Shown here in pieces: positions 21,718-63,910 of a DNA stretch of 64,000 bases. The position numbers were made by a program, and so were the translations under genes. Within the stretch, counting starts at the first letter, position 1. Every line of letters starts with the position of its first letter. The DNA comes from Heterodontus francisci (taxonomy: Eukaryota): positions 8,308,001-8,372,000 of the forward strand of contig NC_090404.1 in assembly GCF_036365525.1 (NCBI RefSeq), written 5' to 3'. The notes beneath the pieces were generated by a model. That model was given only the letters and a program-made list of their open reading frames with translations, searched no databases and was not told the origin of the DNA.

Positions 21718-22512
21718 CATAGAAACATAGAAAATAGGAGGAGGAGTAGGCCATTCGGCCTTTCGAGCCTGCTCCACCATTCATTATGATCATGGCTGAT
21801 CATCCAACTCAGTCGCCTGTTCCCGCTTTTGCCCCATATCCTTTGATCCCTTTAGACCCAAGAGCTATATCTAACTCCTTCTTGAAAACATACAATGTTT
21901 TGGCCTCAACTGCTTTCTGTGGTGGCGAATTCCACAGGCTCACCACTCTCTGGGTGAAGAAATTTCTCATCATCTCAGTCCTGAAAGGTTTACCCCATAT
22001 CCTTAGACTATGACCCCTGGTTCTGGACTCCCCCACCATCGGGAACATCCTTCCTGCATCTACCCTGTCAAGTCCTGTTAGAATTTTATAGGTTTCTATG
22101 AGATTCCCCCTCACTCTTCTGAATTCCAGTGAATATAATCCTAACCGACTCAATCTCTCCTCATACGTCAGTCCCACCATCCCAGGAATCAGTCTGGTGA
22201 ACCTTTGCTGCACTCCCTCTATAGCAAGAACATCCTCCCTCAGATAAGGAGACCAAAACTGCACACAATATTCCAGGTGTGGCCTCACCAAGGCCCTGTA
22301 TAATTGCAGCAAGATATCCCTGCTCCTGTACTCGAATCCTCTCGCTATGAAGGCCAACATACCATTTGCCTTTTTTTTAACCGCCTGTTGCACCTGCATG
22401 CTTACCTTCAGCGACTGATGTACGAGAACACCCAGGTCTCGTTGCATATTCCCCTCTCTCAGTTTATAGCCGTTCAGATAATAATCTGCCTTCCTGTTTT
22501 TGCTACCAAAGT
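21718..22512 (-). mobile_element. CR1-clade LINE 3' fragment
   Basis: ORF 21809-22555 with RDLGVLV, LEYCVQFWSP and RNFFTQRVV motifs. Confidence 0.9.
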
Positions 22513-25086: not shown

Positions 25087-25476
25087 TTAAAGATTTGCGG
25101 GAACCGTTCGTGTCTGTCCTCCTGCCCCCGGCAGACGATGTCTCCGCTCAGAGGTTCCTCTCCCTCACCTGCTTAGTGAGCGGTTTCTCCCCCCGAGAGA
25201 TCTTCGTCAAGTGGACCATCAATGACAAGTCGGTGAATCCCGGCAACTACAAGAACACCGAGGTGATGACGGAGAACGACAATAGGTCCTTCTTCATCTA
25301 CAGCCTGTTATCCATTGCAGCGGAGGAGTGGGTCAGCGGCGCTTCTTACTCCTGTGTGGTGGGACATGAAGCGATCCCCTTGAAGATCATCAACAGAACA
25401 GTTAATAAATCCAGCGGTAACCCGAGTTTTGTGAACATTTCCCTTGCTCTGTTGGACACTCAATTCATGTCAATGA
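25087..25476 (+). CDS. IgNAR: IgNAR heavy chain last constant exon (C5) plus secretory tail (tail frameshifted)
   Basis: Phase-1 acceptor ttttctgcag|; C1-set domain [19 protein letters not shown]...[23 protein letters not shown], recognised as IgNAR C5; internal donor G|GTAA at 25416/25417; tail [15 protein letters not shown] with out-of-frame NSCQ*. Confidence 0.93.
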
Positions 25477-25513
25477 GAATCTCTCGATTGCATTTCAATC
25501 TTAAATACAAACG

Positions 25514-25519
25514 AATAAA
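25514..25519 (+). terminator. Poly(A) signal of the secreted IgNAR form
   Basis: AATAAA about 40 nt after the ancestral stop codon. Confidence 0.7.
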
Positions 25520-27224
25520 GATCTGTTCTTCCAATCGCGATTTAAATACATAACCACTCAATTATTTTTGCTTGCCACATTTGCTAAGTGTAGGTCAATT
25601 CATCTAAAGTAGGATATTTGCAGGTCTCGGGTCAAGTCTTGTAGAATCAGTGCTCCCAGCTCAGATACAGCACAGGTTAGCGACAGAAGAAAGCTGATCC
25701 ATTAGAGGATTCTGTAGAGTAACTGCAGCAACTTTCCTCCCGTTGGGGCGGTGGTGGGTGTGGGGAGCAGTGGGGGTGTGGGTGGGGGGTGGGTGGGCAG
25801 TGAGGGTGGGCAGTGGGGGAGGGGGGGTGGTGGGTGGGCAGTGGGGGGTGGGTGGGCGGGGGCGCAGAAGCTGAAATTTTCCAAGTGCATTTAGATCTCG
25901 GTGTTCCTGCTTCTCGTGTTGTCCATCCCTTCAGAATTAGGGTCAGTTTTAAATTGCAGCATAGGAGCCACTAGGAGCTGAAATGAGGTCCACACAGGAA
26001 TACGAACTATACACAAAATCCCCCATCAGAAAGAGGGGAAAGGATAATTTATTAACCCACTGTACCGCCGCTTCCTAAGCAGAGGGAGGGAAAGGGCAAT
26101 TGTTAACCCACTGTAACTCCACTTCTCCAATAGAGAGAGGGCAAAGGCAATTGTGAACCATCTGTAGCCCCTCCCCCCCAATTCCTCCAACAGATAAAGC
26201 AGCAAGGACATTTAATAACCCACTGTACTTCCACTACTCGGTCAGAGAGATTGGCAGGCAACTGCTCTCTATTGTAGTCTCAGCAGCCATCAGTACAAAG
26301 TCGGCTTCTAGCTCACTGTGCAAAGGATTTAAACTTTCTACATGGGAATCATATTGCAAAGTATGCAACATCATGTCTTTAAACCTTTTCCTGTTAATCT
26401 TATGCGACCAGATTGAATTCTAATAGTCCAAATCTAATTGGTGATAGAATATTTCTCTGTTTTTTTTTCCACTGATGTTTCTGAGGCCCAACATTTGTAT
26501 TGCTGCGTGCATTCAGCTGATGTTATATTGTATCTCACACAGAACACGTTTATACATAGAACAGTGAAAAACATTCTCTACAATGCACACGGTCAAGGAC
26601 AGACCCAGTTATTGGTTCTCTGTGGAACATTGAAAAATAACAAAAATGCACAGGCACACACATAAACACACTCACATGCAGAAACACACACATACACCGA
26701 CACACACAAACATAATCATAAACACTCACCTTAGTACAGTCTCACGTACACAGAAATATAGACATAAAAGCACACACTAGGATACACATTAACACACATG
26801 CATGGACGCACATACTCACACATTAACAGAGTTACACACGTACACACAAACACATAAATAAATAGAGACATTAGCCCATTCACTCACGCACAAATAAACA
26901 TCAACAGTAATATACTGGCACACATGGATACACAAACCCGCACATAAACACATATGTACACATAATCACACATTAACACACGTATTAATACATAAATGTA
27001 GAAATCAACATATCAACACACATTATCACATTTTTAGGGGCACAAGAAGACATAAAGAAGCAGATTAACACACCCCTTAAAAACATTGACACATGAACAC
27101 ACATAAACTTACAGGGAAACAAACACATCCACCAACACAGAAAGACAGATTAACAAACTCATGGGGAACACAAACACACATATAAATAAATGTGAAGGCG
27201 CTCACACACAGAGATGGATAGATA

Positions 27225-40520: not shown

Positions 40521-40535
40521 AGCGCCATCTAGTGG
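40521..40535 (-). promoter_or_regulatory. CTCF motif
   Basis: Minus strand CCACTAGATGGCGCT matches the CTCF core consensus. Confidence 0.65.
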
Positions 40536-41454: not shown

Positions 41455-41774
41455 AGTTATTGTACAGAGTCCTCGTTACTTTATTTCACCGTGTCTCACT
41501 GCACTGTAATACACCGCAGCGTCTGACAGCCGAGTCGTGTTTACCGTAAGAGTAGTGAAGCCCTTCTCCCTATCCACAGATATTTTAAACCTTCCCTCAA
41601 CTCTCTCATCGCCGAATGTGGAGAGGAGATACTGGGGAGCTTGATTGGAGAACTGCCGGTACCAGAATATAGAATCAGCTGTAGTGAAAGTAGCGTTGTG
41701 ATGAAGTGAAATGGTTTGTCCTTCGGTTCCTTGATGCACCGACATCTGGAATGTCTCCGAGTGACAAGGAACAG
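41455..41774 (-). pseudogene. TRAV: TCR alpha/delta-type V exon plus 23-RSS; open frame but both canonical Cys lost
   Basis: WYRQ...APQYLL...GRF...DAAVYYSAVR; RSS CACGGTG(41493-41487)-23-ACAATAACT; no intact leader found. Confidence 0.8.
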
Positions 41775-42244
41775 CTGTTAAAGCAAGATCAATAATTAAC
41801 AAAATGATAAATACAAAGAGAACTAAATACTGTGTGGTTGATACTGAGACAATGGACTAATCTACGCATTGTCTATCTATCTATCTGTCGGTCTTTCCAT
41901 CACTATATCTATTTATCTATCTAGTCACCTATCTATATCTATCTCTCTATCTATATATATTAATCTACCCCCACCTTGCGCTATTTATCTATCCATCTCA
42001 GTGTGTGTGATGCAATTCCATGACTTTCTATCTATTTACTCTGTATTTTGCCCAACCAAACACACACTATCTCAGTTAACATATTTCGATGCACTGTATC
42101 TGAAGTAACAGCGCTAGGATATTGTAACTTTATCCAGATGGAAGTTCAAACACGGGTCAATAACATTTCTGAATATCACCAACACTTCTAAATGACTTGG
42201 TTTGGGGAAAGGTGAACCGTGCATCGGAGACACGGCAGCAAACA

Positions 42245-42712
42245 AGATATTGTGCATCTGGATGTGCTCTTTGACTCACTGTGTCCCCACGGCACAGTGA
42301 TATAGTCCGGCGTCCTGGGCCTCGGTGCCATCTATAGAAATGGTGTTGGACTTCTTTACTCGGTCCAAGGACAGTGTGTAGCGTCCAGTAGTCTCAGTCC
42401 CCTGGTATATGGAGCTGATAAATGTCGGTGCCCCTGTCAGTGTTTGTCTGTACCAGCCTACTCTATCGCCAGCAGCAATGGAGAGCCGGCAGTCCAGTTC
42501 AACCCGTTCCCCTTCCCGAGAAACCACCTGCTCAGGGTGTGAACTCTGATCCTCACACTGAACGGCTGTGAACAAAAACAAAATCACTCAACAACCACAA
42601 GGTATTAAGAGATTGGTGAAACAGGGTGTCTGATCAGATAAATAAACTCACACAACATCAACAGCACCAGAACTCCAACTGGAACCAGGTTTTTGCGGAA
42701 GTTTCTGTTCAT
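42245..42712 (-). CDS. TRAV: Intact TCR alpha/delta-type V gene (leader 42712-42652, V exon 42565-42284, 23-RSS)
   Basis: Leader MNRNFRKNLVPVGVLVLLML with GTGAGT donor; ELDC...GWYRQ...DAGLYHC; RSS CACAGTG-23-ACAATATCT. Confidence 0.88.
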
Positions 42713-44796: not shown

Positions 44797-45064
44797 CTTC
44801 CCACAATAATGTACTCTGGAGCCTCGATTTCCTGCACATTGAAAATATTATAACCTCTCTTTCTACCAACAAATACTCCGAACCGTCCGCTCCGCAGGTT
44901 GCGTTAACCGAATATAATATAAATTCCGGTGCCTGTCCAGTAATTGCTGCTACCACATAATCCTGTTACTGCCAACTGGTGGCTGCATCGCGTCAGATTT
45001 GAACCACTTGTCCTTTCGCAGTCGACACCTGCTCAGTTTGGGATATCCCCTCCTCACCACGGAC
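44797..45064 (-). pseudogene. Decayed TCR V pseudogene (not in the ORF track)
   Basis: Fragments ISQTEQVSTAKGQVVQI / NRIMW*QQ / GQAPEFIL / GRFGVFVGRKRGYN / YCGK; resembles the 42.3-kb V. Confidence 0.6.
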
Positions 45065-45782: not shown

Positions 45783-46131
45783 TTTTTTTTTAGAGATACA
45801 GCACTGAAACAGGCCCTTCGGCCCACCGAGTCTGTGCCGACCATCAACCACCCATTTATACTAATCCTACACTAATTCCATATTCCTACCACATCCCCAC
45901 CTGTCCCTATATTTCTCCACCACCTACCTATACTAGGGGCAATTTATAATAGCCAATTTACCTACCAACCTGCAAGTCTTTTGGCATGTGAGAGGAAACC
46001 GGAGCACCCGGAGGAAACCCACGCAGACACAGAGAAAACTTGCAAACTCCACACAGGCAGTACTCAGAATTGAACCCGGGTCCCTGGAGCTGTGAGGCTG
46101 CGGTGCTAAGCACTGCGCCACTGTGCCGCCC
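45783..46131 (-). mobile_element. Full-length HE1-type SINE
   Basis: Near-identical to 1016-1361. Confidence 0.85.
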
Positions 46132-46234
46132 ATCTGCGAGGAAACGATTCAATAATAACCTACCCATTGAAAATGATATAACTTCGCTTCTCCAAAAGAT
46201 CCGCATTACTTCCAGATTCGCGAAAGCATTTCAT

Positions 46235-47460
46235 AGAGTCATAGAACCATTTACAGCTTAGAAGGAGTCCATTCTGCCCATCAAGTCCATGCTAACTCTC
46301 CGTCGAGCAATCCAGTCAGGCCCACTCCCCCTCTCGATCCCGTGTCCCTGCAAGTTTATTTCCTTCAAGTGTGGAACGAATTCCCTTTTGAAATAATTGA
46401 TGGTCTCCGCTTCCACCACCCTTATGGGCAGCGAGTTCCATGTAATTACCACTCGTTAGGTAAAAATGTTTTCCCTCATATTCCCAGAGTCTCTTGCCAC
46501 AGATCTTCAATCTTTCTCCCCTAGTCCTTTTACCATCAGTTACTGAGAACAGTTTTTCCTTGTCTGACTTTTCTAAACCTTTTATAAATTTTGCACAACC
46601 CGATCAACCTCCCCCTACCCCCAAACTTCGTTGCTCCCGGGAGAACAACGCCAGATTTTTCTAACCTTGTGACTAAAATTTCCCCATTCCTGGAACCATT
46701 CTGGTAAATCTCTTTTGCACCCTCTCAAGGACCCTCAAATCCTCCAGAAATTGTAGTGACCAGAACTGGACACAATACTCTAGTTCGGGCCAGACAGAGC
46801 TTTGTAAAGGTCCAGCATAACTTCCCTGCTTTTGTACTCTATGCCTCCGTTTATGAAGCCCAAGATCCCATTTGCTTTACTAACCACACTCCTAGTGTAT
46901 CCTCCTACCTTCAAAACAGATGCACATGCACCCCCAAGCCCCGCTGTCCCTGTACACTCTTTAGAAATGCGACATTATGACTATATTGCCTCAGCCTATC
47001 CGCTCTGCCTAAATGCATCACCTCATACGTATCAGTATTAAATTCCATCTGCCACTCGTTTGCCCATTCTGCTGTTGCAGGCGTTCCGTACAATCCTCAC
47101 TCCACCAATTTTGGTATCGTCGGCAAATTTTGAAATTCTACACTGTATTCCAAGACATTGGAATCCAAGTCATTTATATCTAAGCAAAAAAGGCAGTGGT
47201 CCCAGCGCTGACCCCGAAACCATTTACCACAACTCGCTGTTTTCTGTTCCGGTGAAGGGTCACTGACCCGAAACGTTAACTCTGCTTCTCTTTCCACAGA
47301 TGCTGCCAGACCTGCTGAGTGGTTCCAGCATTTCTTGTTTTTATATTCGCTGTTTTCTGTCCTTAACCTATTTTATTTTACCCAACTGGGCCTTTTATTC
47401 CATGAGCCTCAATTTTGTTAACCAGCCTTTTATCAAACAGAGTTACTTCATTAGCCTCCA
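46235..47460 (-). mobile_element. CR1-clade LINE fragment
   Basis: WQMEFN, EVMHLGR and WNSLP motifs. Confidence 0.75.
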
Positions 47461-49555: not shown

Positions 49556-50006
49556 CTCTAAGTATTGATCTTGCTGCTCGGTGAGTCTATGTTTAAATGG
49601 TCAGCGTGTCATCCAGGGGTTAAATTTATTCACTGACTTTTGAAACATTCTACATTTGTGTTCCAGGAACGAGTAGCGGACATTCAGTATCCCAGAATCC
49701 ATTTGAATTACCAGTTCAGGAAGGATAGTGCACAATATTGGACTGTAGTTACTCGACAACCGACACTACCCCAACTCTGTTCTGGTACATTCGACATCAC
49801 CGGGAAGCTCCGAGATATTTACTGAAGAAATATAGCTCGGAAATTGAAGATAAGACTCCAGATTTCCCAGACAGGGTTTCTGCTGTTTTGCACAAAGGAA
49901 ACAGCACGGTACCCTGAAATATCGCCGGAGCTCTTCTCTCCGACACCGCTGTGTATTTCTGAATCCCACACTGCTGCAGAGATAGAACGGATCCTGGACA
50001 AAAACT
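49556..50006 (+). pseudogene. TCR V pseudogene (paralog of the 51.1-kb V); leader truncated by the LINE
   Basis: Leader remnant with GTGAGT donor; frameshifted V; Cys codon lost; RSS CACACTG(49967)-24-ACAAAAACT. Confidence 0.8.
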
Positions 50007-50030
50007 CACACTGAGATTTCCAGTTAGTGG

Positions 50031-50045
50031 TCAGCAGGGGGCGCC
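50031..50045 (+). promoter_or_regulatory. RSS-associated CTCF motif
   Basis: TCAGCAGGGGGCGCC, 24 bp after the nonamer. Confidence 0.6.
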
Positions 50046-51075
50046 CTCACAGCGATAAAGAGAAACAATAACTCCCCCTCCTCAGTGAGAGTCACAGGCA
50101 CCTTCTTAAAAGATCAAAGCAAAATTGTGCTGCATCTGTCTGTCCGTTTGGAATCTTCAGTTTGTTTTCTCGGCCCTCCTGGAAAGAATTGGGTGACAGT
50201 TTGATCCGACATTAATTCGGTTTCCTCTTGCTGTGGGTCTGAGCGCCTGACGCCTCAAATTGCTGAAAAATGTTGTTGTACAATTATGTCGCATTCTCTT
50301 TGTTCTTATTATTACAATTATTATATACTTCAATGCAGTTGAACATATGCTCGGAGTTAATATCAAATTCAGTTTAATCCTGGTGGTTCCCTTTCTATAT
50401 TTTTAATATTCCAGACATAATGGTTAAATTATACTCAATTTAGACAATATGAAAGGACAGTGCTCACGATAAGATGCAGTTTCTTAAATGACCATGCATA
50501 GAATGGATGCAAATATGACTCTTGATTCACGCCTATGCTATATCTAGTAGCATTTTAATGTAACTGCTTCTATTTTTAATTCATCTTTGTGTTTTTGTTA
50601 TTATATCCTCTATCATAGCTGTTCCTATTAATGAAACACTTTGGGGAACTCTTTGAAACAATGGAAATTGGATTTTCTACACTCTTCACTGCTCATGAAA
50701 CATGGTAGAAAGAGACTGGGCAGAGAAACGGAGAGAGAGGCTCAGAGACACAGAGAGGGGAGATAGAGATTCAGTGAGTCCGAATGATAGCGAGACAGAC
50801 AGATCCGAGACGGAGAGAAAGCTGAAGATACGGAGAAAGGCATAAGGAGAAAGAGAAGCAGTCGGAGGAAGTAACTGGTCTGTAACTGCCGCTCATTGGA
50901 GCCCAAATGTTATCAGTTCTGAGAGAGCAGCCAATCCTGTCCCTGGGAAACGCCCCTGAGATTCTCAATAAGCGAAATCTCTCTCTGATCTCAATTTACT
51001 CTTTAACATCAGACTAGAAAGGTGAACATATTTAAAACATTCTGTTATTTCCTGTGGAACTCTAAACCAGACACC

Positions 51076-51545
51076 ATGTGCTCTCCATGTTACTTACTAA
51101 TAATATTGGTCCTACTGCCCGGTGAGTCTATTTTTAAATGGTTAGTGTCTGTTCCTGGGTTATATTCACTCTCAGGTTTTTTTTTTAATGCATTCTGTGT
51201 TTTGTTACAGGAACCAATGGAGAAGACTCAGTGTCCCAGGATCCTCCTGAATTAACGGTCCTGGAAGGACGGACCGTAATACTGAACTGCAGTTACTCGA
51301 CAGCTGGTTCAACTCTGTTTTGGTACATCCAGTATCCCGGCGAAGCTCCGAGATATTTATTGAAGAAATACAGCACGGCGATGGGAGCTACAGATTTCCC
51401 ACAGAGGTTCTCTGCTGTTTTACACAAAGAAAACAAAACGGTTCCTTTAAGTATCGGCGGGGTTCTTCTCTCCGACACCGCCGTGTATTTCTGTGCCATG
51501 AACCCCACACTGCTGCAGAGATATAGCGGATCCCGTACAAAAACC
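51076..51545 (+). CDS. TRAV: Intact TCR alpha/delta V gene (leader 51076-51121, V exon 51211-51505, RSS)
   Basis: Leader MCSPCYLLIILVLLP; ILNCSY...LFWYIQYPGEAPRYLL...DTAVYFCAM; RSS CACACTG-24-ACAAAAACC. Confidence 0.9.
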
Positions 51546-51569
51546 CACATTGAGAGTTCCAGTTAGTGT

Positions 51570-51584
51570 TCACCAGAGGGCGCT
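51570..51584 (+). promoter_or_regulatory. RSS-associated CTCF motif
   Basis: TCACCAGAGGGCGCT, 24 bp after the nonamer. Confidence 0.6.
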
Positions 51585-52229
51585 CTCACATCAATAAACA
51601 GAAACAGTAATCCAGCCTCCACAGTGAGAGTCACAGAGATCTTCCGAAAATGTCATAAAACACACAACCCTCAACATGAACAGGTGAGGACCACTTGCGA
51701 AGTTATAATAGTTGATTTCACCTATACCAACAATGAACTTCATAAATTCTTTTGTGGCGTGTTCACTCACATTTGATCTTTTGATGTTCTTTCCTACCTG
51801 GTCGGAATTATTGCGCAGCCCTTTCCCCATCTCCGTTTTCAGTTTCTCGGTCCCTTTGATCACAGCCGGTCCACTGAGACCATTTCACCAGAGTACATTG
51901 TTAGTTCACAGTTTTTACAAAATGAACAAATTTCACAAGGTCGTGATTGCACTCTTTAGAACAAGGAACGAGCACAGAGTTCCCCCAATTTTCATTTTCC
52001 TTTTGAGTCTTTTTTTTTAATGATTTAATATTTTCTGTCACCATTCCGCTTTACAATAACCAGGCCATTGTTTCAATCCCACCCGCTCTCTAAATTTGTA
52101 ACCATTCCCCCTGTCTGTAGCCCAGTCGGGGTGGTTCCATTCACTAGCAGCCAGCTCGCCACATGGCAGTGTCCCAGCACGACTGCAGACACAAGGAAGT
52201 GAGGTGAGAGCATTCCTTGTTTGTTACAG

Positions 52230-52500
52230 GAATGAGAGGCGCCTACTCAATGTCCCAGGATCCGTCTCATTTCACGGTTCCAGAAGATGAGACCTTAATA
52301 TTCAGCTATAGTTACTGCACATCCGAAAGATTACTCCACCTTTATTTGTGTACCACTATTCTGGTTAAGCTCCAAGATATTTACTGAGTGAATATAACTC
52401 CTGTCGGGGAAATAAGTCTCAAAACCTCCCGCAGCAGTTCTCTGTTGAGTCAGACAAGGACAAAGGCGCAATACAACTGTTTATATAGAAACCTGTCAGT
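52230..52500 (+). pseudogene. Truncated TCR V pseudogene (51.1-kb family)
   Basis: gttacag acceptor; TCCCAGGATCC, AGTTACT and CTCCAAGATATTTACTGA homology; no RSS. Confidence 0.65.
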
Positions 52501-52587
52501 CTTTGTTATCCGTGAATTTGGGACCAATCTAATACCTCAGATAACGGCACCAAATAACACTTAATGGAACTTTAAATAGTCGTTGAG

Positions 52588-53111
52588 GTTTTTTGTCCGG
52601 ATCTTGGCTTTTATCTCACTGCACTGTAATAGGCCGCCCCGTCCTCTACACCCAGGCCGCTTATATTGAGGTAAACGTACTTTTTAGACTTCTCAGCAGC
52701 CGCGAAACATTGTCCAGAGACTTTGGCTTCCTTCAATACGACTACTTTGTTCATAATCCAGCTTGGAGGCTGTGCCGATTTCTCCCAATACATTGCATTC
52801 TCTCAATAACCTGGGCCTATATTCACAATCTAACGACACCTAACCACTTTCTGACACAGTTATTGTCACCGGAGACTGAATTACTAGGTCTGCACATAGT
52901 CCGACTGTGAAAGTAGAGGGATAAATATCAGGAGGTGAAACAGGATCGGTCCAAACTTTTGTCTACCTTTGTTAGTGTGTGTGACCTCCCATCTACCCCC
53001 AAAAATACATTAAATCCGAGTACAAACTCTTTGCATAAAGCTGCTAACCTGCCTTGATTAACGTAATCCAATACTCACTACCCAACACAGCCGCCACATT
53101 GTTAGAAACAT
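52588..53111 (-). pseudogene. TCR V pseudogene
   Basis: Leader remnant; V exon from 52904 (DLVIQSPVTITVSESG*VSLDCEY...LNISGLGVEDGAAYYSAVR); nonamer present, heptamer damaged. Confidence 0.75.
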
Positions 53112-53310
53112 GTCTGACTGAATCCCTCGCAGTGATTGAAGTGGAATGAGCCAGAGATTGAGAAGGGGGGAGAGGTAAACTCTCGCCTGTTCAACTCATT
53201 GTTCCACCCACACTGCAAGGGACGGCCCAATTGTGACCTCACTCAGGCTACGATCCCTATTGGCTTTGGCGTTGTTATCACGTGACTTCGTAATCACCAA
53301 GTTTGAATTT

Positions 53311-53325
53311 GGCGCCCTCTGCTGG
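53311..53325 (-). promoter_or_regulatory. CTCF motif upstream of the minus-strand V leader
   Basis: Minus strand CCAGCAGAGGGCGCC. Confidence 0.6.
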
Positions 53326-54359
53326 CTAATTCTATTTAACTCGGTCTAGAGTGGGGCCATTGAATGAATTTATTGTTTATTAACTTACATATCAAAACGC
53401 GAATGCCAGACAATGCCTACCAGGGATCTAAATCGGAGATTATTATACCCAGTCTTTATTGTTTCTGATGTTTATGGTAGAAATTGATGTTAAACCTTTC
53501 GAAATCACTGTTCAATTATAGTTCTGAGTCCAATTCCGGACACCACCATTGAGAAACTATTTCAAGACATTGCAGAAAGTGAGGAGGAGATACACCAGAA
53601 TAGTATCAAGGATCAAGGAATTTTATGTGTTCACATTAGAGAAACTGAGTTGTTCTCCTCGTTTCACAAATGTTAAAGGACAGACCTAATTGAGTTGCTC
53701 AAAATCAATGGTTTTGATAGAGTAGATCATATGTAACTGCTTCCACTAGCAAACAATTCGATAACCAAAGCACCCGGATTTAAGAGAATTGATGAAAGAA
53801 GTCAAGGATAGATGAGATTTAGTTATCAAACTCTTGATTTGTTAAAATCTAGAATGCACTGCCGAAAAGGGCGATGGAAGAAGATTCAAGAGGAACTTTC
53901 AAAAGGGATCTATACACAACTTGAAAAACAAAAAATGCAGGGCTTTGTGGAAAACGTGAGGAGTGAAAGATGAATTGGAGAACGCTTTCAAAGAGACACA
54001 TAAGGTTCTATTATTCTAGGCCCTTCATGTTCCTCCCACTCGATTTGTTGACAGTCAATTGAACAGTGAGCAGGTGCAGAATAGCCACAGACTATTCAAC
54101 CGTCGCTATTTCCGCTCCGAGTGCAGCTAAGTGTCGCCGCACACTTCGCTCAATTGTTTACTCTGTGGTAGTCCCGCCCACGGCTTCCTTTTGCCGCTTT
54201 ACCTCTGACCAGCAATCCCCCTGCTGTGTTAATAGAGAGATTGCTGCCGCTGTCCCATGTTTTGCATTGGTTGGCTCAGTGGCACAGTGGAACGGGGATC
54301 TTTATTTCAGCTCCCACCGAAGATCCGCGGACAACAGAGTTAGAGACTCAAGAAGTATC

Positions 54360-54898
54360 ATGTGGAACCATCTCTCACAGCTCCTCATCATTCTGTCACT
54401 TCTCAGTAAGTATTTCCTATCCTGCAAAAACCCATTCTCATCCACTAATTTCTGTAATCCAGGTGTTAGTAATTGAAGAATTATAGTGATGGTAGTGATG
54501 ATGGTTAAGTTGTTCGACGTAATGATGGTGATTCTGACATATTATTTCATATTAGACTGGAGCCACCAAGATACAGTGGAACAGCCGGTTCCAGAAATGA
54601 CGGTTGAAGAAGAAAGTAATGCCACGTTAACCTGCACGTTGAAAACAAGCGACTCTAATCCTAATGTATTCTGGTACAGTCAGCTCCCCAGACAAGCTCC
54701 ACAGTACGTGTTTTATCTCTATGGAAATATAGTAAAGCGGAACCCGGACTACACAAACCGATTCTCTTCTAAATTTGCTAAAAATAGCAAGGTTACCGAG
54801 CTGACGATCAGTAACGCCCTGATCTCCGACACCGCCGTGTATTTCTGTGCCATGAGCCCCACACTGCTGCAGAGAGAAGCGGATCCCGTACAAAAACC
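54360..54898 (+). CDS. TRAV: Intact TCR alpha/delta V gene (leader 54360-54405, V exon 54556-54859, 23-RSS)
   Basis: Leader MWNHLSQLLIILSLL with GTAAGT donor; TLTC...VFWYSQLPRQAPQY...DTAVYFCAMS; RSS CACACTG-23-ACAAAAACC. Confidence 0.9.
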
Positions 54899-54923
54899 CC
54901 ACACTGAGAGTTCCAGGTCGTGT

Positions 54924-54938
54924 TCGGCAGAGGGCGCT
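54924..54938 (+). promoter_or_regulatory. RSS-associated CTCF motif
   Basis: TCGGCAGAGGGCGCT, 25 bp after the nonamer. Confidence 0.55.
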
Positions 54939-55344
54939 CTCACAGAGTAATAATTCAGTTACAGTAAGAGAGACCTTGTTACAACCACAACAAGCACAAA
55001 CCTCATCAGGAACAGTTGAATCCCACTTGCGCAGTTATATCAGTTTGTGGTCGCATTTAATTAAAAATAACTTCACAAATAGATCTGTCATTCTTTGATT
55101 CCACTTTTGTTGTTATACGTGCGTTCCCTGCCCACCTTTTCCTATTACACCCTGTCTCCACTTTTTACACATAATTATATACATTCCCCTCTTCCAGTCT
55201 TCAGTTTAAAGATGCTACTTTGCTGTAACTTAATTCAGAACCACTCCAACCCAGCTACCCATAGATTCAGCAATAAAAAGGTCAAACAGCATCTGTGGAG
55301 AGAGAAGCAGAGTTAACGTTTCAGGTCTGTGACCTTTCATCATT

Positions 55345-55522
55345 ACCTTGAAAACAAACATGCTGTGTTGTCGTACAGTCAGCACTCGGTCGCACTCCAC
55401 AGTATGTGGAGGGGTAATAAACCAGAACTGACTCATTCATTTCTCTGTTTAATAAAATTAACAAAATTACCGAGCTAACGATCAGCACTGGCCTAATCGG
55501 CCACGCACTGCTGCAGAGATAT
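55345..55522 (+). pseudogene. V remnant (54.4-kb family) with the 5' half of its RSS
   Basis: TTGAAAACAA, TACAGTCAG, CTCCACAGTA and TTACCGAGCT-ACGATCAG homology; ends in CGCACTG-CTGCAGAGATAT. Confidence 0.65.
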
Positions 55523-55523
55523 T

Positions 55524-57110
55524 GAATCATAGAAAGTCTAAGGCACAGAAAGAAGCCACTTGGCCCATCGTGTCTGTGCTGGCTGAAAAATGATCCACCT
55601 ATTCTAATCCCACCTTCTTGCATTTGGTCCGTCGTCCTGCAGATTACGACACTTTAGGTGCATACCCAGACTCCATTTGAATGAGTTGAGGGTTTGTGCC
55701 TCAACTACCCTTTCAGACAATGGGTTCCAGACCATCACCACCCTCTGGGTGAAAAGGTCTTCCCTCAACTCTCCTCTAATTTTTCTACCAATCACTGTAA
55801 ATCTATACCTTCTCGTCACTGACCTCTCTGCTAAGGTGAATAGACCCTTCACCTCCACTTTATCCAGGCCGCTCAAAATTTTATACATTTTAATCAGATC
55901 TACCTCAGCCTTCTCTGCTCCAAGGAGAACAACCCCAGCCTATCCAATCTTTCCTCATAGCTCCATTTTTCCAGTCCCAGCAACATCCTCGTCAATCTCC
56001 TCTGTACCCTCTCTAGTGCGATTACATCCGTTCTGTAATGAGGTGACCAGAACTGCACACAGTACTCATGTTGTGGCCTAACCAATGAGTTATACAGTTC
56101 CAGCATAACCTCCCTGCTCTAATATTCTATACCTCGGCTAATTAAAGAAAAGATACCATTTGCCTTCTTAACCACCTTATCGACCTGTCTTGCTACCTTC
56201 AGGGATCTGTGGGCATTCACTCCAAGGTCCCTCACTTCCTCTACACTTCTCAGTATTTTCCCATTAATTGTGTATTCCTTTGCCTTGTTTGACCTCCGCA
56301 ATTGCATCACCTCACACTTCTTCAGGCTGAATTCCATTGGTCACTTTTCTGCCCATCTGCAGCCTACAGCTATCCTCCTCGCTATCTACCACATGGCCAA
56401 TCTTTGTGTTATCTGATCGTGTCCCCTACATTTACGCCCAAATTCTCAATATATACCACAAAAAGCAGGGGACCCAGTATTAAGCCCTGGGGAACGCCAC
56501 TGGAAACAGCCCTCCAGTCGCTAAAACAGCCATCAGCAATTACCCTTTGTTTCCTGCCACTGAACTAATTTTGTATCCACCTTGCTACATTTCCCTGGAT
56601 CTATGGGATTTTAATGTTTTGAACCAGTCTGCCAAAAGTTTTGTCTTGTCTTGTCAAAAGCCTTGCTAAAATCCATGTGGACCACATCAACTGCACTATC
56701 CTCACCTATCTTCCTAGTTATTTCTTCAAAGATTCGATCAAGTTGGTCAAACAAGATCTTCCCTTGCCGCTACCACAGAAAGCAGTTGAGGTCAAAACAT
56801 TGTATGTTTTCTAGCTCTTGGGTCGAAAGGGATCAAAGGGTATGGGGCGAAAGTGGAAACAGGCTACTGAGTTGGATGATCAGCCATGATCATAATGAAT
56901 GGCGAAACAGGCTCGAAGGGCCGAATGGCATACTCCTGCTCCTATTTTCTACGTCAATCCACGCTGACTATCCTTGATTAATCTGTGCCTTTCTAAGTGA
57001 CAGTGTATCCAGTCTCTCTGAATAGATTCCGATAATTTTCCCACGACTGAGGTTAGACTGACTGGCATGTAATTATTCGGTATATCCATCTTTTTCCCTT
57101 TTTAAACAGG
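55524..57110 (-). mobile_element. CR1-clade LINE fragment(s)
   Basis: EYCVQFWSP, CEVMQL and RDLGV motifs. Confidence 0.85.
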
Positions 57111-57129
57111 TTCCACATTAGCAGTTCTC

Positions 57130-57425
57130 GGGGGCAGTGATTTGCACCGCAGCCTCACAGCTCCAGTAACCGGGGTTCAGTTCTGGGTACTGCCTATACG
57201 GAGTTCTCCCTGTGACCGCGTGGGTTTCCGCCGGGTGCTCTGGTTTCCTCCCACAGCCAAAGACTTGCAAGTTGGCAAGTAAATTGGCCATTGTAATTTG
57301 CCCTTAGTGCAGGTAGGAGAATTGAGGGAAGGTACGGAATAATGTAGGATTAGTATAAATGGGTGGTTGATGGTCAGCACAGACTTGGTGGGCCAAGGGG
57401 CCTGTTTCAGTGTTGTATCTCTCTC
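57130..57425 (+). mobile_element. HE1-type SINE
   Basis: Homologous to the other HE1 copies. Confidence 0.8.
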
Positions 57426-57968
57426 TCAATCCTCCGGCATCACACCTGTATCCAGTGAGTACTGGAAAACGATGGTCAGACCTTCTGCTGTTTCCTGTCT
57501 TGCTTCTGTTAACAGCCTCGGGTACATTTAATCTGGCGAACCCGTCGGATCCCGGACAAAAACCCACACAGAGAATTCCAGTTAGTGCTCACCAGAGGGC
57601 ACTCTCACACCGATAAACAGAAGCAATAATTCAGCCTCCACTGTAAGAGTCACAGTTTATTGTACGACAAAATACAACACTCAACAAGTTACCGCTTCCC
57701 CCTATGTATTAACTCCTGACGACAGCGGTTGGGCGACGGAATCGTAATGACACAGACGTGAAAATCATGACAAAACTAGCAATGATCAGACCAGCCGTGT
57801 TTAAAATTCAGATTCAAGATCAGTTGGAAATGAGAGGAAACATAAATGTGGTTTATCCGGCATCATCACTCAACACCATCACTAACCATCACGAATCATT
57901 TTAACCAATAATACCAACAGGGTTATATTAGTCAGGGAGAGAATGGATTTTTCGTGGGAGAGCAACAC

Positions 57969-58155
57969 TGAGAAGTGATATAATGATGAGGAGCGATGCG
58001 AGACGGCCCCACATGATACGAATGAATCTGGAAAATACCCTGTCATAGCAGAAATACAGATTCCCGCCTCACTTCACCCGATCCAACCAATGCCAAACAG
58101 AGAACAGCAGCAGCAATTTCTCCAATAACACGGGCAAGTAACATAGATCAGAGCG
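57969..58155 (-). pseudogene. Inverted copy of the promoter and leader of the 54.4-kb V family
   Basis: Minus strand MWGRLASLLIIISLL from 58014; upstream matches 54200-54300; no V exon recognised. Confidence 0.6.
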
Positions 58156-58658
58156 AAAGCTGAAGAGAGGGCGAAGGAGAAAAAGAAGTCAGTATTCCTC
58201 TGCTACTCACTTTCTCTCGCAATGATCCCTTCCTCTGAAGCTGAATAGTGATGGACATGGACACAGGAGCTGTTTAAATCACGTGTCTGACTACACTGAC
58301 ACCAGAGGGAAAATCAGATTGTTAATGCATCAAAACACAACCCGAAACTTATTACAATTGAACTGCGGAAGTAGAAGTTAGGGAGACGGCTTTAAAGTAT
58401 AGAAGCTCACTTTCCGACTGGTATCGGAAACTCGTCACCTAGGAAAACGGTGGCGCAGTTGTAATGTTACTGCTCTAGTAAGCCAGAGACCTAGACTAAT
58501 GCACTGGCGACACAGTTCAAATCCCAGCAAATTGGCTGGTGGAATTAAGCTCAATTAATTAATAGAAATCTGGAGTTGAAAACTAATCTCAGTAGGCTAG
58601 GAGCGTCAAACTATTTAACACAGTCTGTTATTTTCTGTGGAACTCTAAACAAGACAAC

Positions 58659-59122
58659 ATGTGATCCCCATGTTCCTTACTCTTAATAATGGTCTTGCTG
58701 CTCGGTGAGTCTACGTTTAAACAGTCAGAGTGTGTGCCACTGGTTGTATATGCTAACAGACTTTTGATGCATCCTGTTCTTTATTTCAGGAACGAGTAGC
58801 AAAGGCTCAGTGTCCCAGGATCCGCCTAAATTAACGGTTCAGGAAGGACAGATGATAACACTGAAATGCAGTTACTTCACATTCGAGAGCTTTCCCTATC
58901 ACTACTGGTACATCCAGTATCCTGGGAAAGGTCCGGGATATTTACTGAGGAAATACGTCACGGGGTAGGGGGATAAATCTCCAGATTTCCCAGACAGGTC
59001 CTCTGCTGATTTGGATAACGACAAGAAAACGGTTCCTTTAAAAGTGGCCGGGACTCTGCCGTGTATCACTATGCATTGAGCTCCACACTGTTACAGAGGC
59101 CCAGTGAATCCATACAAAAACC
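58659..59122 (+). pseudogene. TCR V pseudogene (51.1-kb family) with intact 23-RSS
   Basis: ATG TGA in the leader; in-frame TAG; FR3 deletion; RSS CACACTG(59084)-23-ACAAAAACC. Confidence 0.85.
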
Positions 59123-59558: not shown

Positions 59559-60652
59559 ATGTTGGCTGTTTACTTAATCATCACAGCTGCAGCTGTCTTA
59601 ACTGGTAAGCTCACAAGTTACTCAATTCTTTGTTTCACATCTTTTTCATTTGTTCATGGGATGTGGGCGTCGTTGGCTTATACAACATTTATTGCCCATT
59701 CCTAACTGTCCTCTGTATCATACCTAAGTTAGAATCAGTCAGTTCACTATCAGTAAATTGATACGAAGCAAAGAAAACTATCCGGATGCACCCATTTTCA
59801 ACACTGAAAAGTGATTGGGAAACACGACAACTTCCCCAGTAAATGGAAGTGGAAGAGTTGAGGTGAGATTTCAGGTGATTGGCAGCAGACCCACGCCATC
59901 AGGCTCGATCCAATGATTTACTTTGACGGACACACGAATTATTACGCACAGACCGGGTGGGAGTTTCACATACACATCACAAGAGGTGAAGGTGAGGAAC
60001 TGATCCCGCTTGAAGATATTGAAGGTTCATTAAAGTAAGTTTTATTCATTGGATCCAAGTACCACCCTGTTGCAGCCGTGAGGAAAGTAATAAAAACTGG
60101 AAGTGCTGGAAATACTCAGCAAGTCTGGCAACATCTGTCGAGAGAGAAGCAGAGTTAACGATTCACGTCGCCGATCTTTTAGCAGAACTAGGATCTGTAG
60201 GGAATGTATTTGTGTTTAACTGCCCTGATTTAATTTCAGCTCGGTGTTGGCGGTGATAGACACAGTGAAGTGAATTCGTTTAATTTAATATCGCTCTGGG
60301 CTCTTACAGGATTTTGCAGAGGAGACTCCGTTTCACAGACACCGTCTGCAAATACTGTAAAGGAAGGAGATGATGTTCAGTTGCACTGTAATTATACAAG
60401 TACAAGCAACAGCCTTGACCTATTCTGGTACCGTCAGTATCCCAGTGGATCCATGGAGTATCTGCTGCAGAGAAACAGATACAGCGAGGACCGGGAGAGA
60501 TTTCCAGGGGACCGTTTTTCAGCGAAGTTCAATGCATCGAGCCGAACCGTCCCGCTGGAAGTATCTAAAACGGAACTGACAGACTCGGCGGTGTATTACT
60601 GCGCACTGAGACCCACAGAGATACAGAGCTCGGCTGAACCTGTACAAAAACT
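59559..60652 (+). CDS. TRAV: Intact TCR alpha/delta V gene (leader 59559-59604, V exon 60310-60613, 23-RSS)
   Basis: Leader MLAVYLIITAAAVLT with GTAAG donor; QLHCNY...LFWYRQYP...DSAVYYCALR; RSS CACAGAG-23-ACAAAAACT. Confidence 0.9.
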
Positions 60653-61220: not shown

Positions 61221-61235
61221 TCACTAGAGGGCGCC
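61221..61235 (+). promoter_or_regulatory. CTCF motif
   Basis: TCACTAGAGGGCGCC. Confidence 0.5.
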
Positions 61236-62392
61236 ATGATCACATGCTTCTCGCTGTTCCTTCCAGTCTCAGTCCCGTGTTCTTCCTGGTTTGTGGAAAC
61301 CATCAATATTTGAAATTTGTTAGTACGTGTTTCGTGTTTATGAGTTTCAGTAAAATGCTTCCACAGCCGTTTCCCCCCTTGCTCGGTCTGCTATTCATCG
61401 TCAGAATCTCTCCCTACCACACGTATACATTTTTTTTACAGATACGAAAAATCTTAAAGCAACTGCGTGTGCAAAGCTACCGTTTCACAATATATTGTAT
61501 ATTAAAGTGTACAATGAAGGACACATTCAGAGAAACAGAACTGCAACCAGACTGAGGAGTTTCTCCCGTGTCACAAACCATTATTTCCCTCTCCCTGTGA
61601 TTGATGTCAGCACAGTGGAATATAGACTCCTGTTAGTTTCACAGGTATTACTCTCACCTGTTTGTGCAGATATTTGTGGAACGGTCTCATATTCATCTCT
61701 GTTAAATTACAAAAGCAGTCTGATGACGGCGGTAAGATATTGTCTCAAAGTGACAAAATATTGGTTTGAATGTGGATAAAAATGTTCAGTTCATTTCACT
61801 CACTGTCACTGATCGGACTCACGTGTTGGTGGGGTGGGGAGAAGTGTGAGGGCTCGGGTTTGATTAACCTTCTGCTGGGGATACACAAGGGAAAAATTTC
61901 CTTTGGTCTCTGTCTGGATATCTACTTTGAAAGTTGCTTTAGCGCAATCACAAATGCATTCATTTAGCATGTGTCGGTTATTACCCCACAGTGAGGACAC
62001 TTCTGCGTAAACATGAATGTCACAGGGGATTCAAGTTAATGTTCTCGATGAGACATCACACAGCAGCATAAAATAAACAAACACACAGTAACGTGAGCAA
62101 TTCAGCACCTTTGAATATAATCCCACAACTGAGCAATGTTGAAGCTATTCTCACAGCAAAGACTACACTCACTGTGTGACTGGCTCCTCAGTCCGATACT
62201 TTATGCTGTGACCGTCAGTATCTCTGATCAAACTCGCTATCCAATGGGAATTATAGAGACAGACTTTGCAATAACACTGCCCGCGGCAGCGCCGCTCACA
62301 GCCTCCGTTTGCTGCTCTCACTCTGACCCGCCTTGCCTGCCTTGTGTTATTGGAGAGATTGCTGCCGCGGTTCCGGAATTGTACAGGAGGAA

Positions 62393-62580
62393 GGTTTTTG
62401 TGCAGTGACTGCCGCAGGGTGTGGCTCTGTCACGCAGTAATGCACCGCGGTATCCGCGCTCTCCATGTATCCAATGACCAATTGGCTGCGTTTGTCCGCT
62501 GTAGAAAGATCCAGTTCAATGTGCCAGTCGACAATCGCGTTACTACTCCCTTCCGTCTCTGACCGGATTTCGGTTTGTAC
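62393..62580 (-). pseudogene. V pseudogene 3' remnant with shortened RSS
   Basis: DKRSQLVIGYMESADTAVHYC; CACACCC-15-ACAAAAACC. Confidence 0.65.
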
Positions 62581-63679: not shown

Positions 63680-63910
63680 AAATTCCTTTCCTTACCGAAT
63701 GAATAGAGCCTGTGGAACTGTACCGCACAAAGGAATCAACACATTCAGGAGATCTGAATAACCCGTTCCTTATAGGATAGATGGAGCCTGTGGAACTGTA
63801 TCTCGCAATGTAAACAACACATTCAGGACAGTCTGAATATCACTTTCCTGACATGATGGATGGGGCCTGTAGAACTTTGCCCAATATAAGAATCAACAGA
63901 TTCAGGACAG
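63680..63910. repeat. Degenerate tandem repeat (~78 bp x3)
   Basis: GCCTGT-GAACT and ATTCAGGA recur three times. Confidence 0.6.

What the first reader, a model, noticed from the sequence alone, without database searches (positions are those of the whole stretch)
49967..57603. RSS-coupled CTCF cassette on shark TCR V segments
Seen: four V units carry, 24-25 bp after the RSS nonamer and in the same orientation, a CTCF-like core: TCAGCAGGGGGCGCC (50031), TCACCAGAGGGCGCT (51570), TCGGCAGAGGGCGCT (54924) and TCACCAGAGGGCACT (57589). Each sits within a conserved 3' flank, and further sites occur at 53311 (-) and 61221 (+). Established: mouse proximal IgH V genes have CTCF elements just 3' of the RSS that promote use during cohesin loop-extrusion RAG scanning. 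Inference: the same design may operate in a cartilaginous-fish TCR locus, implying an ancient or convergent mechanism that I do not know to be described in sharks. Caveat: the copies are paralogous, not independent.
Basis: partly seen in the sequence, partly recalled or inferred. Interest (0 to 1): 0.8.

Follow-up and report, generated by a model that had tools for sequence, protein, structure and literature searches.

The report
CTCF-like site behind shark V-gene RSS
Four T-cell-receptor V gene units in a shark genome carry a strong match to the binding site of the genome-looping protein CTCF 24-25 bases behind their recombination signal, the layout that steers V-gene choice at the mouse antibody heavy-chain locus. 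Neither CTCF binding nor any effect on V-gene use is shown here.

Summary
Four 15-mers matching the CTCF core lie at 50031, 51570, 54924 and 57589 on the + strand. Each starts 24-25 bp after the nonamer of a 23-bp-spacer RSS and runs in the same direction as its V segment.

- **Units:** Two units are intact TCR alpha/delta-type V segments. Two are pseudogenes, one with its RSS split by about 2 kb of repeat DNA.
- **Shared module:** The motif sits in a module (FR3 end, RSS and about 105 bp of flank) shared by two unrelated V families. Contigs from four other coded organisms pile up on this module, and the second family's FR3 joins it at the same point in all four.
- **Conservation:** The core is no better conserved than its neighbours. 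However, four of its five variable positions change only to bases the CTCF consensus allows.
- **Other V segments:** Five other V-like segments in the window lack an RSS-adjacent motif.
- **Comparison with mouse:** Position and orientation match the RSS-associated CTCF elements of mouse proximal VH genes, not the promoter-side sites of mouse TCR alpha/delta.

CTCF binding, looping and V usage are untested. The scan has already noted CTCF-motif minisatellites behind TCR-beta V RSSs on other pieces of this genome. No open paper I found describes this in sharks.

The parts
49669..49966 (+). VA: V exon of a pseudogene, same V family as VB, with three in-frame stops and the leader/promoter lost
   Evidence: Translation. 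Homology to VB spans 49563-50111 at 75%.
49967..50006 (+). RSS of VA (heptamer CACACTG, 24-nt spacer, nonamer ACAAAAACT)
50007..50111 (+). Conserved 3' flank of VA. CTCF-like core TCAGCAGGGGGCGCC at 50031-50045.
51076..51505 (+). VB: intact V segment (leader 51076-51121, intron, V exon 51211-51505). V-set domain; best solved relatives are TCR alpha chains.
51506..51545 (+). RSS of VB (CACACTG, 24-nt spacer, ACAAAAACC)
51546..51650 (+). Conserved 3' flank of VB: 24-nt linker with a conserved TTCC, CTCF-like core TCACCAGAGGGCGCT at 51570-51584, then a 66-nt post-core block. Homology to VA and VD stops at about 51650.
   Evidence: Contigs of four other organisms pile up on 51471-51650.
54360..54859 (+). 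VC: intact V segment of a different V family (leader 54360-54405, V exon 54556-54859). From 54823 on it carries the same FR3-end/RSS/flank module as VB.
   Evidence: VB-VC homology is limited to 51469-51713 / 54823-55045. By segment: FR3 end 97%, spacer 92%, linker 88%, core 87%, rest of the V exon 63%.
54860..54898 (+). RSS of VC (CACACTG, 23-nt spacer, ACAAAAACC)
54899..54946 (+). Flank of VC: 25-nt linker, CTCF-like core TCGGCAGAGGGCGCT at 54924-54938, and 8 conserved bases. The post-core block is deleted or diverged.
55435..55520 (+). VD: remnant of a VC-family V (FR3) plus the heptamer and left half of the RSS spacer
55521..57544 (.). About 2 kb of interspersed-repeat DNA inserted inside the RSS spacer of VD
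   Evidence: Copies elsewhere in the window at 1021-2402, 21725-21927 and 45792-46887
57545..57655 (+). Right half of the VD RSS (spacer end, nonamer 57556-57564) and the conserved flank. CTCF-like core TCACCAGAGGGCACT at 57589-57603, with the core CpG changed to CpA.
58792..59122 (+). VE: pseudogene of the VB family with a 23-RSS (59084-59122) but an unrelated flank and no CTCF motif. Serves as an internal control.
   Evidence: Homology to VB ends exactly at the nonamer, 51011-51545 vs 58594-59122. Translation.
60312..60652 (+). VF: intact V of a third family with an RSS (60614-60652) and no RSS-adjacent CTCF motif
61221..61235 (+). Solitary CTCF-like site TCACTAGAGGGCGCC, about 570 bp 3' of the VF RSS, same direction as the V genes
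   Evidence: Single copy in the window.
53311..53325 (-). Solitary perfect CTCF-consensus site on the opposite strand, between the truncated V at 52220-52460 and VC
   Evidence: Single copy.
40521..40535 (-). Perfect CTCF-consensus site on the minus strand, near the border between the Ig constant-region gene and the V array

Best explanation
The four motifs belong to one conserved module: the last ~37 bp of FR3, a 23-bp-spacer RSS and a flank of up to ~105 bp. Two different TCR alpha/delta-type V families share this module. I read the flank as an RSS-associated CTCF-binding element of the kind known from mouse proximal VH genes. CTCF bound 24-40 bp behind the nonamer would have its cohesin-blocking N-terminal side facing the downstream D/J/C side. 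It would stall cohesin-driven loop extrusion coming from a downstream recombination centre, which would hold that V segment's RSS at the centre longer and raise its chance of being cut and joined. What is shown: motif quality, position, orientation, persistence of the module in paralogues and in four other organisms, and substitutions in the core that mostly stay within the CTCF consensus. What is inferred: that shark CTCF binds here in thymocytes, that the recombination centre lies downstream on the + strand, and that binding affects V usage.
For: - Motif and spacing. A <=1-mismatch match to the independent 15-mer consensus is expected 0.45 times in the whole window on both strands. That is about 0.0004 in a given 105-nt flank on a given strand.
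- Core variation: 4 of the 5 variable core columns change to the alternative base the consensus allows (S, R, R, Y).
- VC as a natural deletion test: this intact V keeps the linker, the core and 8 further bases, but has lost the post-core block.
- Upstream motif: a conserved TTCC (GAGTTCC in VB and VC) lies 9 nt 5' of the 15-mer. It matches the 3' half of the upstream CTCF motif 'CAGCTGTTCC' given in PMC12885311.
- Module versus surroundings: the module is 82-100% identical where the rest of VB and VC barely align.
- Other species: in four other coded organisms the summed contig depth rises about 5-fold on 51471-51650. The VC-type FR3 joins the module at the same point, 51469. Among the 40 best-supported differences shown (181 more were not), none lies inside the core.
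- Orientation: the N-terminal side of CTCF faces downstream of CCACCAG...GGC (PMC12885311). Mouse VH CBEs all point to the 3' side (PMC6439775), and 129 of 144 mouse TCR alpha/delta V-region sites point to J-C (PMC5859386).
- CTCF recognition is conserved: lamprey CTCF binds the same two-part motif (PMC5504073). Skate TAD borders carry oriented CTCF motifs (PMC10115646).
- Function in mouse: deleting the VH5-2 RSS-associated CBE cuts its rearrangement 50-fold (PMC10293834).
Against: - There are no binding, accessibility, contact or repertoire data.
- The core is not more conserved than the linker or nonamer in raw terms (5 of 15 vs 6 of 24 vs 1 of 9 variable columns).
- The weakly constrained RSS spacer is just as well conserved between VB and VC (92%). 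That fits recent copying or gene conversion of the whole block as well as it fits selection.
- Two of the four copies flank dead V genes.
- Five other V-like segments in the window, including intact VF, have no RSS-adjacent motif.
- All four copies have T, not C, at consensus position 1, and VC has a second mismatch at position 3.
- The 66-nt post-core block is as conserved as the core in VA, VB and VD, and CTCF does not explain it.
- The four other organisms are coded. They share 31-mers with this window, so they may be close relatives.
Confidence: 0.5

Rival explanations
1. Passive hitch-hiking. The CTCF-like 15-mer is a piece of a block (FR3 end, RSS, flank) that spreads and is homogenised among V segments by duplication and gene conversion. 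It persists because the block is young or repeatedly copied, not because CTCF binds it.
For: Conservation is about even across spacer, linker, core and post-core, at 80-92%. The core is not less variable than its neighbours. The block has sharp ends at 51469 and about 51650 and is shared between unrelated V bodies, as expected for conversion tracts. Pseudogenes VA and VD keep the motif.
Against: It does not explain why a near-consensus CTCF core was in the block at all (about 0.0004 expected per flank and strand). Nor does it explain the orientation that matches mouse V-region sites, why changes in the core fall on consensus-degenerate positions, or why VC kept the linker and core while losing the post-core block. 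Earlier notes on the same genome (untested here) report CTCF motifs right behind TCR-beta V RSSs as well.
Confidence: 0.3
2. The flank is conserved for another reason, and the likeness to CTCF is incidental. Possibilities are a site for another factor, an element of germline V transcripts, or sequence context that helps RAG use the RSS.
For: The 66-nt post-core block and the heptamer-like CACAYTG abutting the nonamer are conserved and are not explained by CTCF. An 18-nt direct repeat brackets the core.
Against: No known RNA family matches. VC lacks the post-core block yet is intact. The best-conserved stretch common to all four copies runs from the spacer end to 8 nt past the core, which is roughly what I would expect CTCF to cover (my own estimate, not checked here). 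No alternative factor is indicated by any test here.
Confidence: 0.12
3. The motif was brought by a transposable element, as SINE B2 spreads CTCF sites in mouse, and happens to lie near these RSSs.
For: The window is rich in interspersed repeats, and one has inserted into the VD RSS.
Against: The three parts of the flank occur only behind these RSSs: the linker in all four cassettes, the two post-core parts in VA, VB and VD. They are always at the same offset and are found nowhere else in 64 kb on either strand. No tRNA/SINE-type RNA family is hit. The solitary sites at 40521, 53311 and 61221 are single copy.
Confidence: 0.03

Closest known systems
RSS-associated CTCF-binding elements of mouse D-proximal VH segments (VH5-2/VH81X type)
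   Same: A CTCF core just 3' of the V RSS. In mouse it is 'within 68 bp downstream of the RSSs' (PMC6439775) or 'within 100 bp of the RSS' (PMC5859386); here the core spans 25-40 bp after the nonamer. It points the same way as the V gene, towards the D/J/C side, and is family-specific rather than universal among V segments.
   Different: The locus type is TCR alpha/delta-like V segments, not IgH. The lineage is an elasmobranch. These V segments lie at the end of the array next to an Ig gene, not next to D/J. The site is part of a module shared by two V families. There is no evidence of binding or of an effect on V usage.
CTCF sites of the mouse Tcra/Tcrd V region
   Same: The same kind of locus. 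Most sites point towards J-C (129 of 144; PMC5859386).
   Different: [quoted passage not shown] Here they lie behind the RSS, and no forward-oriented motif is found at the VB or VC promoters.
45-bp CTCF-motif minisatellites behind TCR-beta V RSSs in this same genome
   Same: According to those notes, CTCF motifs start about 20 bases behind a V RSS and point the same way as the V gene.
   Different: Here there is a single copy per V and no tandem array.
Transposon-borne CTCF sites (e.g. SINE B2)
   Same: The motif is multiplied by copying a longer unit.
   Different: The unit copied is the 3' end of a V segment with its RSS, not a mobile element.

Membership tests
RSS-associated CTCF-binding element (mouse proximal VH type) | Sequence matching the CTCF core consensus | tested here: met
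   1, 1, 2 and 1 mismatches to CCASYAGRKGGCRSY. The invariant CAG..GGC positions are intact in all four.
RSS-associated CTCF-binding element (mouse proximal VH type) | Lies within about 68-100 bp 3' of the V RSS | tested here: met
   The core starts 24-25 nt after the nonamer. Mouse distances are from PMC6439775 and PMC5859386.
RSS-associated CTCF-binding element (mouse proximal VH type) | Oriented towards the D/J/C side (convergent with downstream elements) | tested here: inconclusive
The motif is on the V sense strand, so it points 3' of the V gene. The D/J/C region is not in the window.
RSS-associated CTCF-binding element (mouse proximal VH type) | Occupied by CTCF (and cohesin) in developing lymphocytes | not testable with these tools
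   No ChIP, CUT&RUN or ATAC data are reachable.
RSS-associated CTCF-binding element (mouse proximal VH type) | Loss of the site lowers contact with the recombination centre and use of that V | not testable with these tools
   Needs repertoire data or mutants.
RSS-associated CTCF-binding element (mouse proximal VH type) | Motif conserved beyond neutral expectation | tested here: inconclusive
   Raw variability of the core is not lower than that of the linker or nonamer. However, 4 of 5 variable positions stay within the consensus (p about 0.003-0.02). No difference inside the core is among the 40 best-supported differences listed for four other organisms, a list that omits 181 more.
TCR alpha/delta-type V gene segment | Leader exon, intron and V-set exon ending in YFC, followed by a 23-bp-spacer RSS; closest relatives are TCR alpha/delta V domains | tested here: met
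   Pfam V-set at E 7e-15 and 2e-16. RSS. The best single-domain solved relatives are TCR alpha chains, with some delta. Only V exons were searched; the joined leader+V product was not.
CTCF-motif minisatellite (as noted at this genome's TCR-beta V segments) | Head-to-tail array of motif-bearing units | tested here: not met
   Tandem Repeats Finder finds no such array in 38000-64000.
Transposon-borne CTCF site | Motif lies in an interspersed repeat with copies away from V segments | tested here: not met
   Flank pieces occur only behind these four RSSs. No Rfam hit.

The most novel reading that the evidence does not exclude
The FR3-end/RSS/CTCF block is a portable 'recombination-access' module. 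It is copied between unrelated V families, kept as a unit by selection, and present in both the TCR alpha/delta and TCR beta loci of elasmobranchs. On this reading, coupling a CTCF loop-extrusion brake to the V RSS is an ancestral design of jawed-vertebrate antigen-receptor loci. Mammals would have kept it only at proximal VH genes and moved it to promoters in TCR loci.
Probability: 0.2. Interest if true: 0.8.

Novelty: new member of a known kind. Interest (0 to 1): 0.55.

Why it matters
RSS-associated CTCF elements are the best-proven link between cohesin loop extrusion and V-gene choice, but the open papers I read describe them only for mouse IgH. A same-layout, same-orientation element in a cartilaginous-fish TCR locus would date this design, or its repeated invention, to the base of jawed vertebrates. 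It would also give a simple natural test set. Within 10 kb there are V segments of one family with the site (VA, VB) and without it (VE), one copy with a decayed CpG in the core (VD), and one copy with the post-core block deleted (VC). CTCF mapping and repertoire sequencing in shark thymus could settle the question directly.

Tried and rejected
- **A degenerate pattern of linker plus core found nothing** in metagenome contigs.
- **The earlier-findings index by sequence was blank**.
- **No tandem array and no Rfam family**, so the minisatellite and SINE readings were rejected for this window.
- **The solitary CTCF sites at 40521, 53311 and 61221 are not related to each other or to the cassette**.
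- **A second RSS in the flank was considered and not pursued.** The flank holds a heptamer-like CACAYTG abutting the nonamer and a CACAGTG 74 nt on. The second heptamer is not conserved in VA or VD, and no nonamer lies at 12 or 23 nt.
- **The upstream CTCF motif matches only in its 3' half**, so I treat it as a hint.
- **The apparent 13/15 identity of VE to the core is an artefact** of forcing a global alignment. Local alignment ends at the nonamer, and no motif is found there.
Full report
**What is there**

The stretch 49.5-61 kb of the window holds six V units on the + strand.
- **VA** (V exon 49669-49966) is a pseudogene with three in-frame stops.
- **VB** (leader 51076-51121, V exon 51211-51505) is intact.
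- **A truncated V** at 52220-52460 has no RSS.
- **VC** (leader 54360-54405, V exon 54556-54859) is intact and belongs to a different V family.
- **VD** is a VC-family remnant (55435-55520). Its RSS spacer is split by about 2 kb of interspersed repeat (55521-57544), with copies elsewhere in the window.
- **VE** (58792-59083) is a VB-family pseudogene.
- **VF** (60312-60612) is an intact V of a third family.

The V exons are V-set domains. Their best single-domain relatives among solved structures are TCR alpha chains, with some delta.

The organism is an elasmobranch. An Ig C-domain exon at 25098-25430 is 79% identical to a Chiloscyllium punctatum protein and 80% identical to a sandbar-shark C mu 4 fragment. 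An Ig gene next to TCR V segments fits the reported linkage of elasmobranch IgH genes to the TCR alpha/delta locus (PMC12227049 abstract).

**The observation**

Each starts 24, 24, 25 or 24 nt after the nonamer of a 23/24-nt-spacer RSS, on the V sense strand. Against the independent consensus CCASYAGRKGGCRSY they have 1, 1, 2 and 1 mismatches. The shared mismatch is T for C at position 1.

The window as a whole has 9 sites at <=1 mismatch against 0.45 expected. These include perfect minus-strand sites at 40521 and 53311 and a plus-strand site at 61221.

**The unit that carries the motif**

Local alignments show a discrete module.
- VB and VA are alike from the leader to 51650 (75%) and unalignable beyond it.
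- VB and VD are 88% alike over 51527-51636.
- VB and VC, whose V bodies barely align, share only 51469-51713.

By segment, VB against VC gives FR3 end 97%, heptamer 100%, spacer 92%, nonamer 100%, linker 88% and core 87%. The rest of the V exon gives 63%. So the last ~37 bp of FR3, the RSS and the flank form a block shared by two V families.

VE shares promoter, leader, V and RSS with VB at 72%, but the likeness stops exactly at the end of the nonamer. It has no motif. The three pieces of the flank occur nowhere else in the 64 kb on either strand. There is no tandem array and no Rfam family. This rules out the minisatellite form and argues against a transposon-borne site.

**Other species**

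The index of public runs shows that the source organism holds the stretch. Six other coded organisms hold only 5-8% of its 31-mers. I laid the contigs of four of them on 51080-51760 at 80% likeness.
- In all four, summed contig depth rises about 5-fold at 51471, stays high through the core (51563-51585) and falls to nothing after about 51655.
- More contigs cover the module than the V body. For example, 27, 15, 15 and 27 contigs cover 51550, against 10, 10, 9 and 18 at 51320.
- In all four, loose ends 'before 51469' read a VC-type FR3. The two V families therefore share the module at the same junction in these species too.
- Four well-supported differences are shown in the module: 51550, 51569, 51591 and 51593. 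There VB is the odd one out. None lies inside the core, but the table shows only the best-supported rows (181 more were not shown).
- A few contigs of one organism lack most of the core (loose end at 51566).

The organisms are coded, so their distance from the source is unknown. Depth of contigs is not copy number.

**Is the motif under constraint?**

In raw terms it is not distinguishable. Among the four copies, 5 of 15 core columns vary, against 6 of 24 in the linker and 1 of 9 in the nonamer. Pairwise identity of the core (80-93%) is like that of its neighbours (82-88%).

Two weaker signals point the other way.
- Four of the five variable core columns change to the alternative base the consensus allows (C/G at S, A/G at both R positions, C/T at Y). 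The tail probability is 0.003-0.02 with four paralogues.
- VC, an intact V, keeps the linker, the core and 8 further bases, but has lost the post-core block. The stretch common to all four copies therefore runs from the end of the spacer to just past the core.

Two further observations bear on this.
- The one copy with a CpG-to-CpA change in the core (VD) is the one whose RSS is destroyed.
- A conserved TTCC lies 9 nt before the 15-mer. It matches the 3' half of the upstream CTCF motif quoted as CAGCTGTTCC, with a variable linker, in PMC12885311. This is a hint only.

**Comparison with what is known**

[quoted passage not shown] Deleting the VH5-2 CBE lowers its rearrangement 50-fold (PMC10293834). 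These CBEs lie 'within 68 bp downstream of the RSSs' and point to the 3' side (PMC6439775). PMC5859386 Table 2 places bound CTCF as follows:
- IgH: 'within 100 bp of the RSS' for several VH families.
[quoted passage not shown] The shark cassettes thus look like mouse proximal VH, not like mouse TCR alpha/delta.

The N-terminal side of CTCF faces downstream of the CCACCAG...GGC strand (PMC12885311). That this side blocks cohesin is established knowledge from my own reading. The + strand motifs would therefore stop extrusion arriving from the downstream side, where D/J/C are expected. That region is outside the window.

Shark CTCF probably reads the same motif. Lamprey CTCF binds the mammalian two-part motif (PMC5504073). 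Skate TAD borders carry oriented CTCF motifs (PMC10115646).

**Novelty**

Five full-text searches combining CTCF with shark, nurse shark or elasmobranch terms and with TCR, V-segment or antigen-receptor terms found no paper describing CTCF sites at shark antigen-receptor V segments. Subscription papers are not covered.

This scan has already noted 45-bp CTCF-motif minisatellites starting about 20 bases behind TCR-beta V RSSs on other pieces of the same genome. I could not test those notes or compare the sequences.

**Verdict**

The best reading is a single-copy, RSS-coupled CTCF-binding element carried in a V 3'-end module (confidence 0.5). The main rival is passive persistence in a copied or converted block (0.3). 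Function is untested.

Noticed in passing
window 55521-57544: About 2 kb of interspersed-repeat DNA lies exactly inside the 23-bp spacer of the RSS of V remnant VD. Copies occur at 1021-2402, 21725-21927 and 45792-46887. The two RSS halves (ending ...CTGCAGAGATA and starting TCGGATCCCGG) are otherwise intact.
   Followed up: partly
window 51545-51562 and 51619-51636: An 18-nt direct repeat (83% alike, spacing 74) brackets the CTCF-like core. The first copy begins with a heptamer-like CACAYTG that abuts the nonamer, and the second holds CACAGTG in VB only. This may be chance or a trace of a partial tandem duplication.
   Followed up: partly
window 40521-40535 (-), 44968-44982 (-), 53311-53325 (-) versus 50031, 51570, 54924, 57589, 61221 (+): CTCF-consensus sites point leftwards near the Ig-gene side and rightwards through the V array. 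This is a divergent arrangement, as seen at domain borders, and it sits at the junction of an Ig constant-region gene and the TCR V array. There are 9 sites at <=1 mismatch against 0.45 expected.
   Followed up: partly
window 54174-54312, 58047-58131 (-), 62292-62368 (+): A promoter-like block upstream of VC (...GAGAGATTGCTGCCGC...) recurs twice at about 77% identity. One copy is in reverse orientation upstream of VE. The other abuts the RSS of a minus-strand V.
   Followed up: no
window 62393-62454 (-), 41455-41790 (-), 42255-42710 (-): Three V-like segments lie on the minus strand, so they would need inversional joining. One has a 12/13-nt-spacer RSS (62393-62421) and two have 23-nt-type RSSs. 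None has a CTCF motif beside its RSS.
   Followed up: partly
window 58594-59122 versus 51011-51545: VE and VB are alike from promoter to nonamer (72%), and the likeness stops exactly at the last base of the nonamer. The flank was therefore exchanged or lost at the RSS border.
   Followed up: partly
window 25095-25553 (+): An Ig C-domain exon with a secretory-tail-like end. Its closest named relatives are shark proteins (Chiloscyllium punctatum 79%, Carcharhinus plumbeus C mu 4 fragment 80%). Earlier notes call it IgNAR C5, which was not checked here.
   Followed up: partly
window 63706-63910: A 79-bp tandem repeat with 2.6 copies at 76% matches, at the right end of the window.
   Followed up: no
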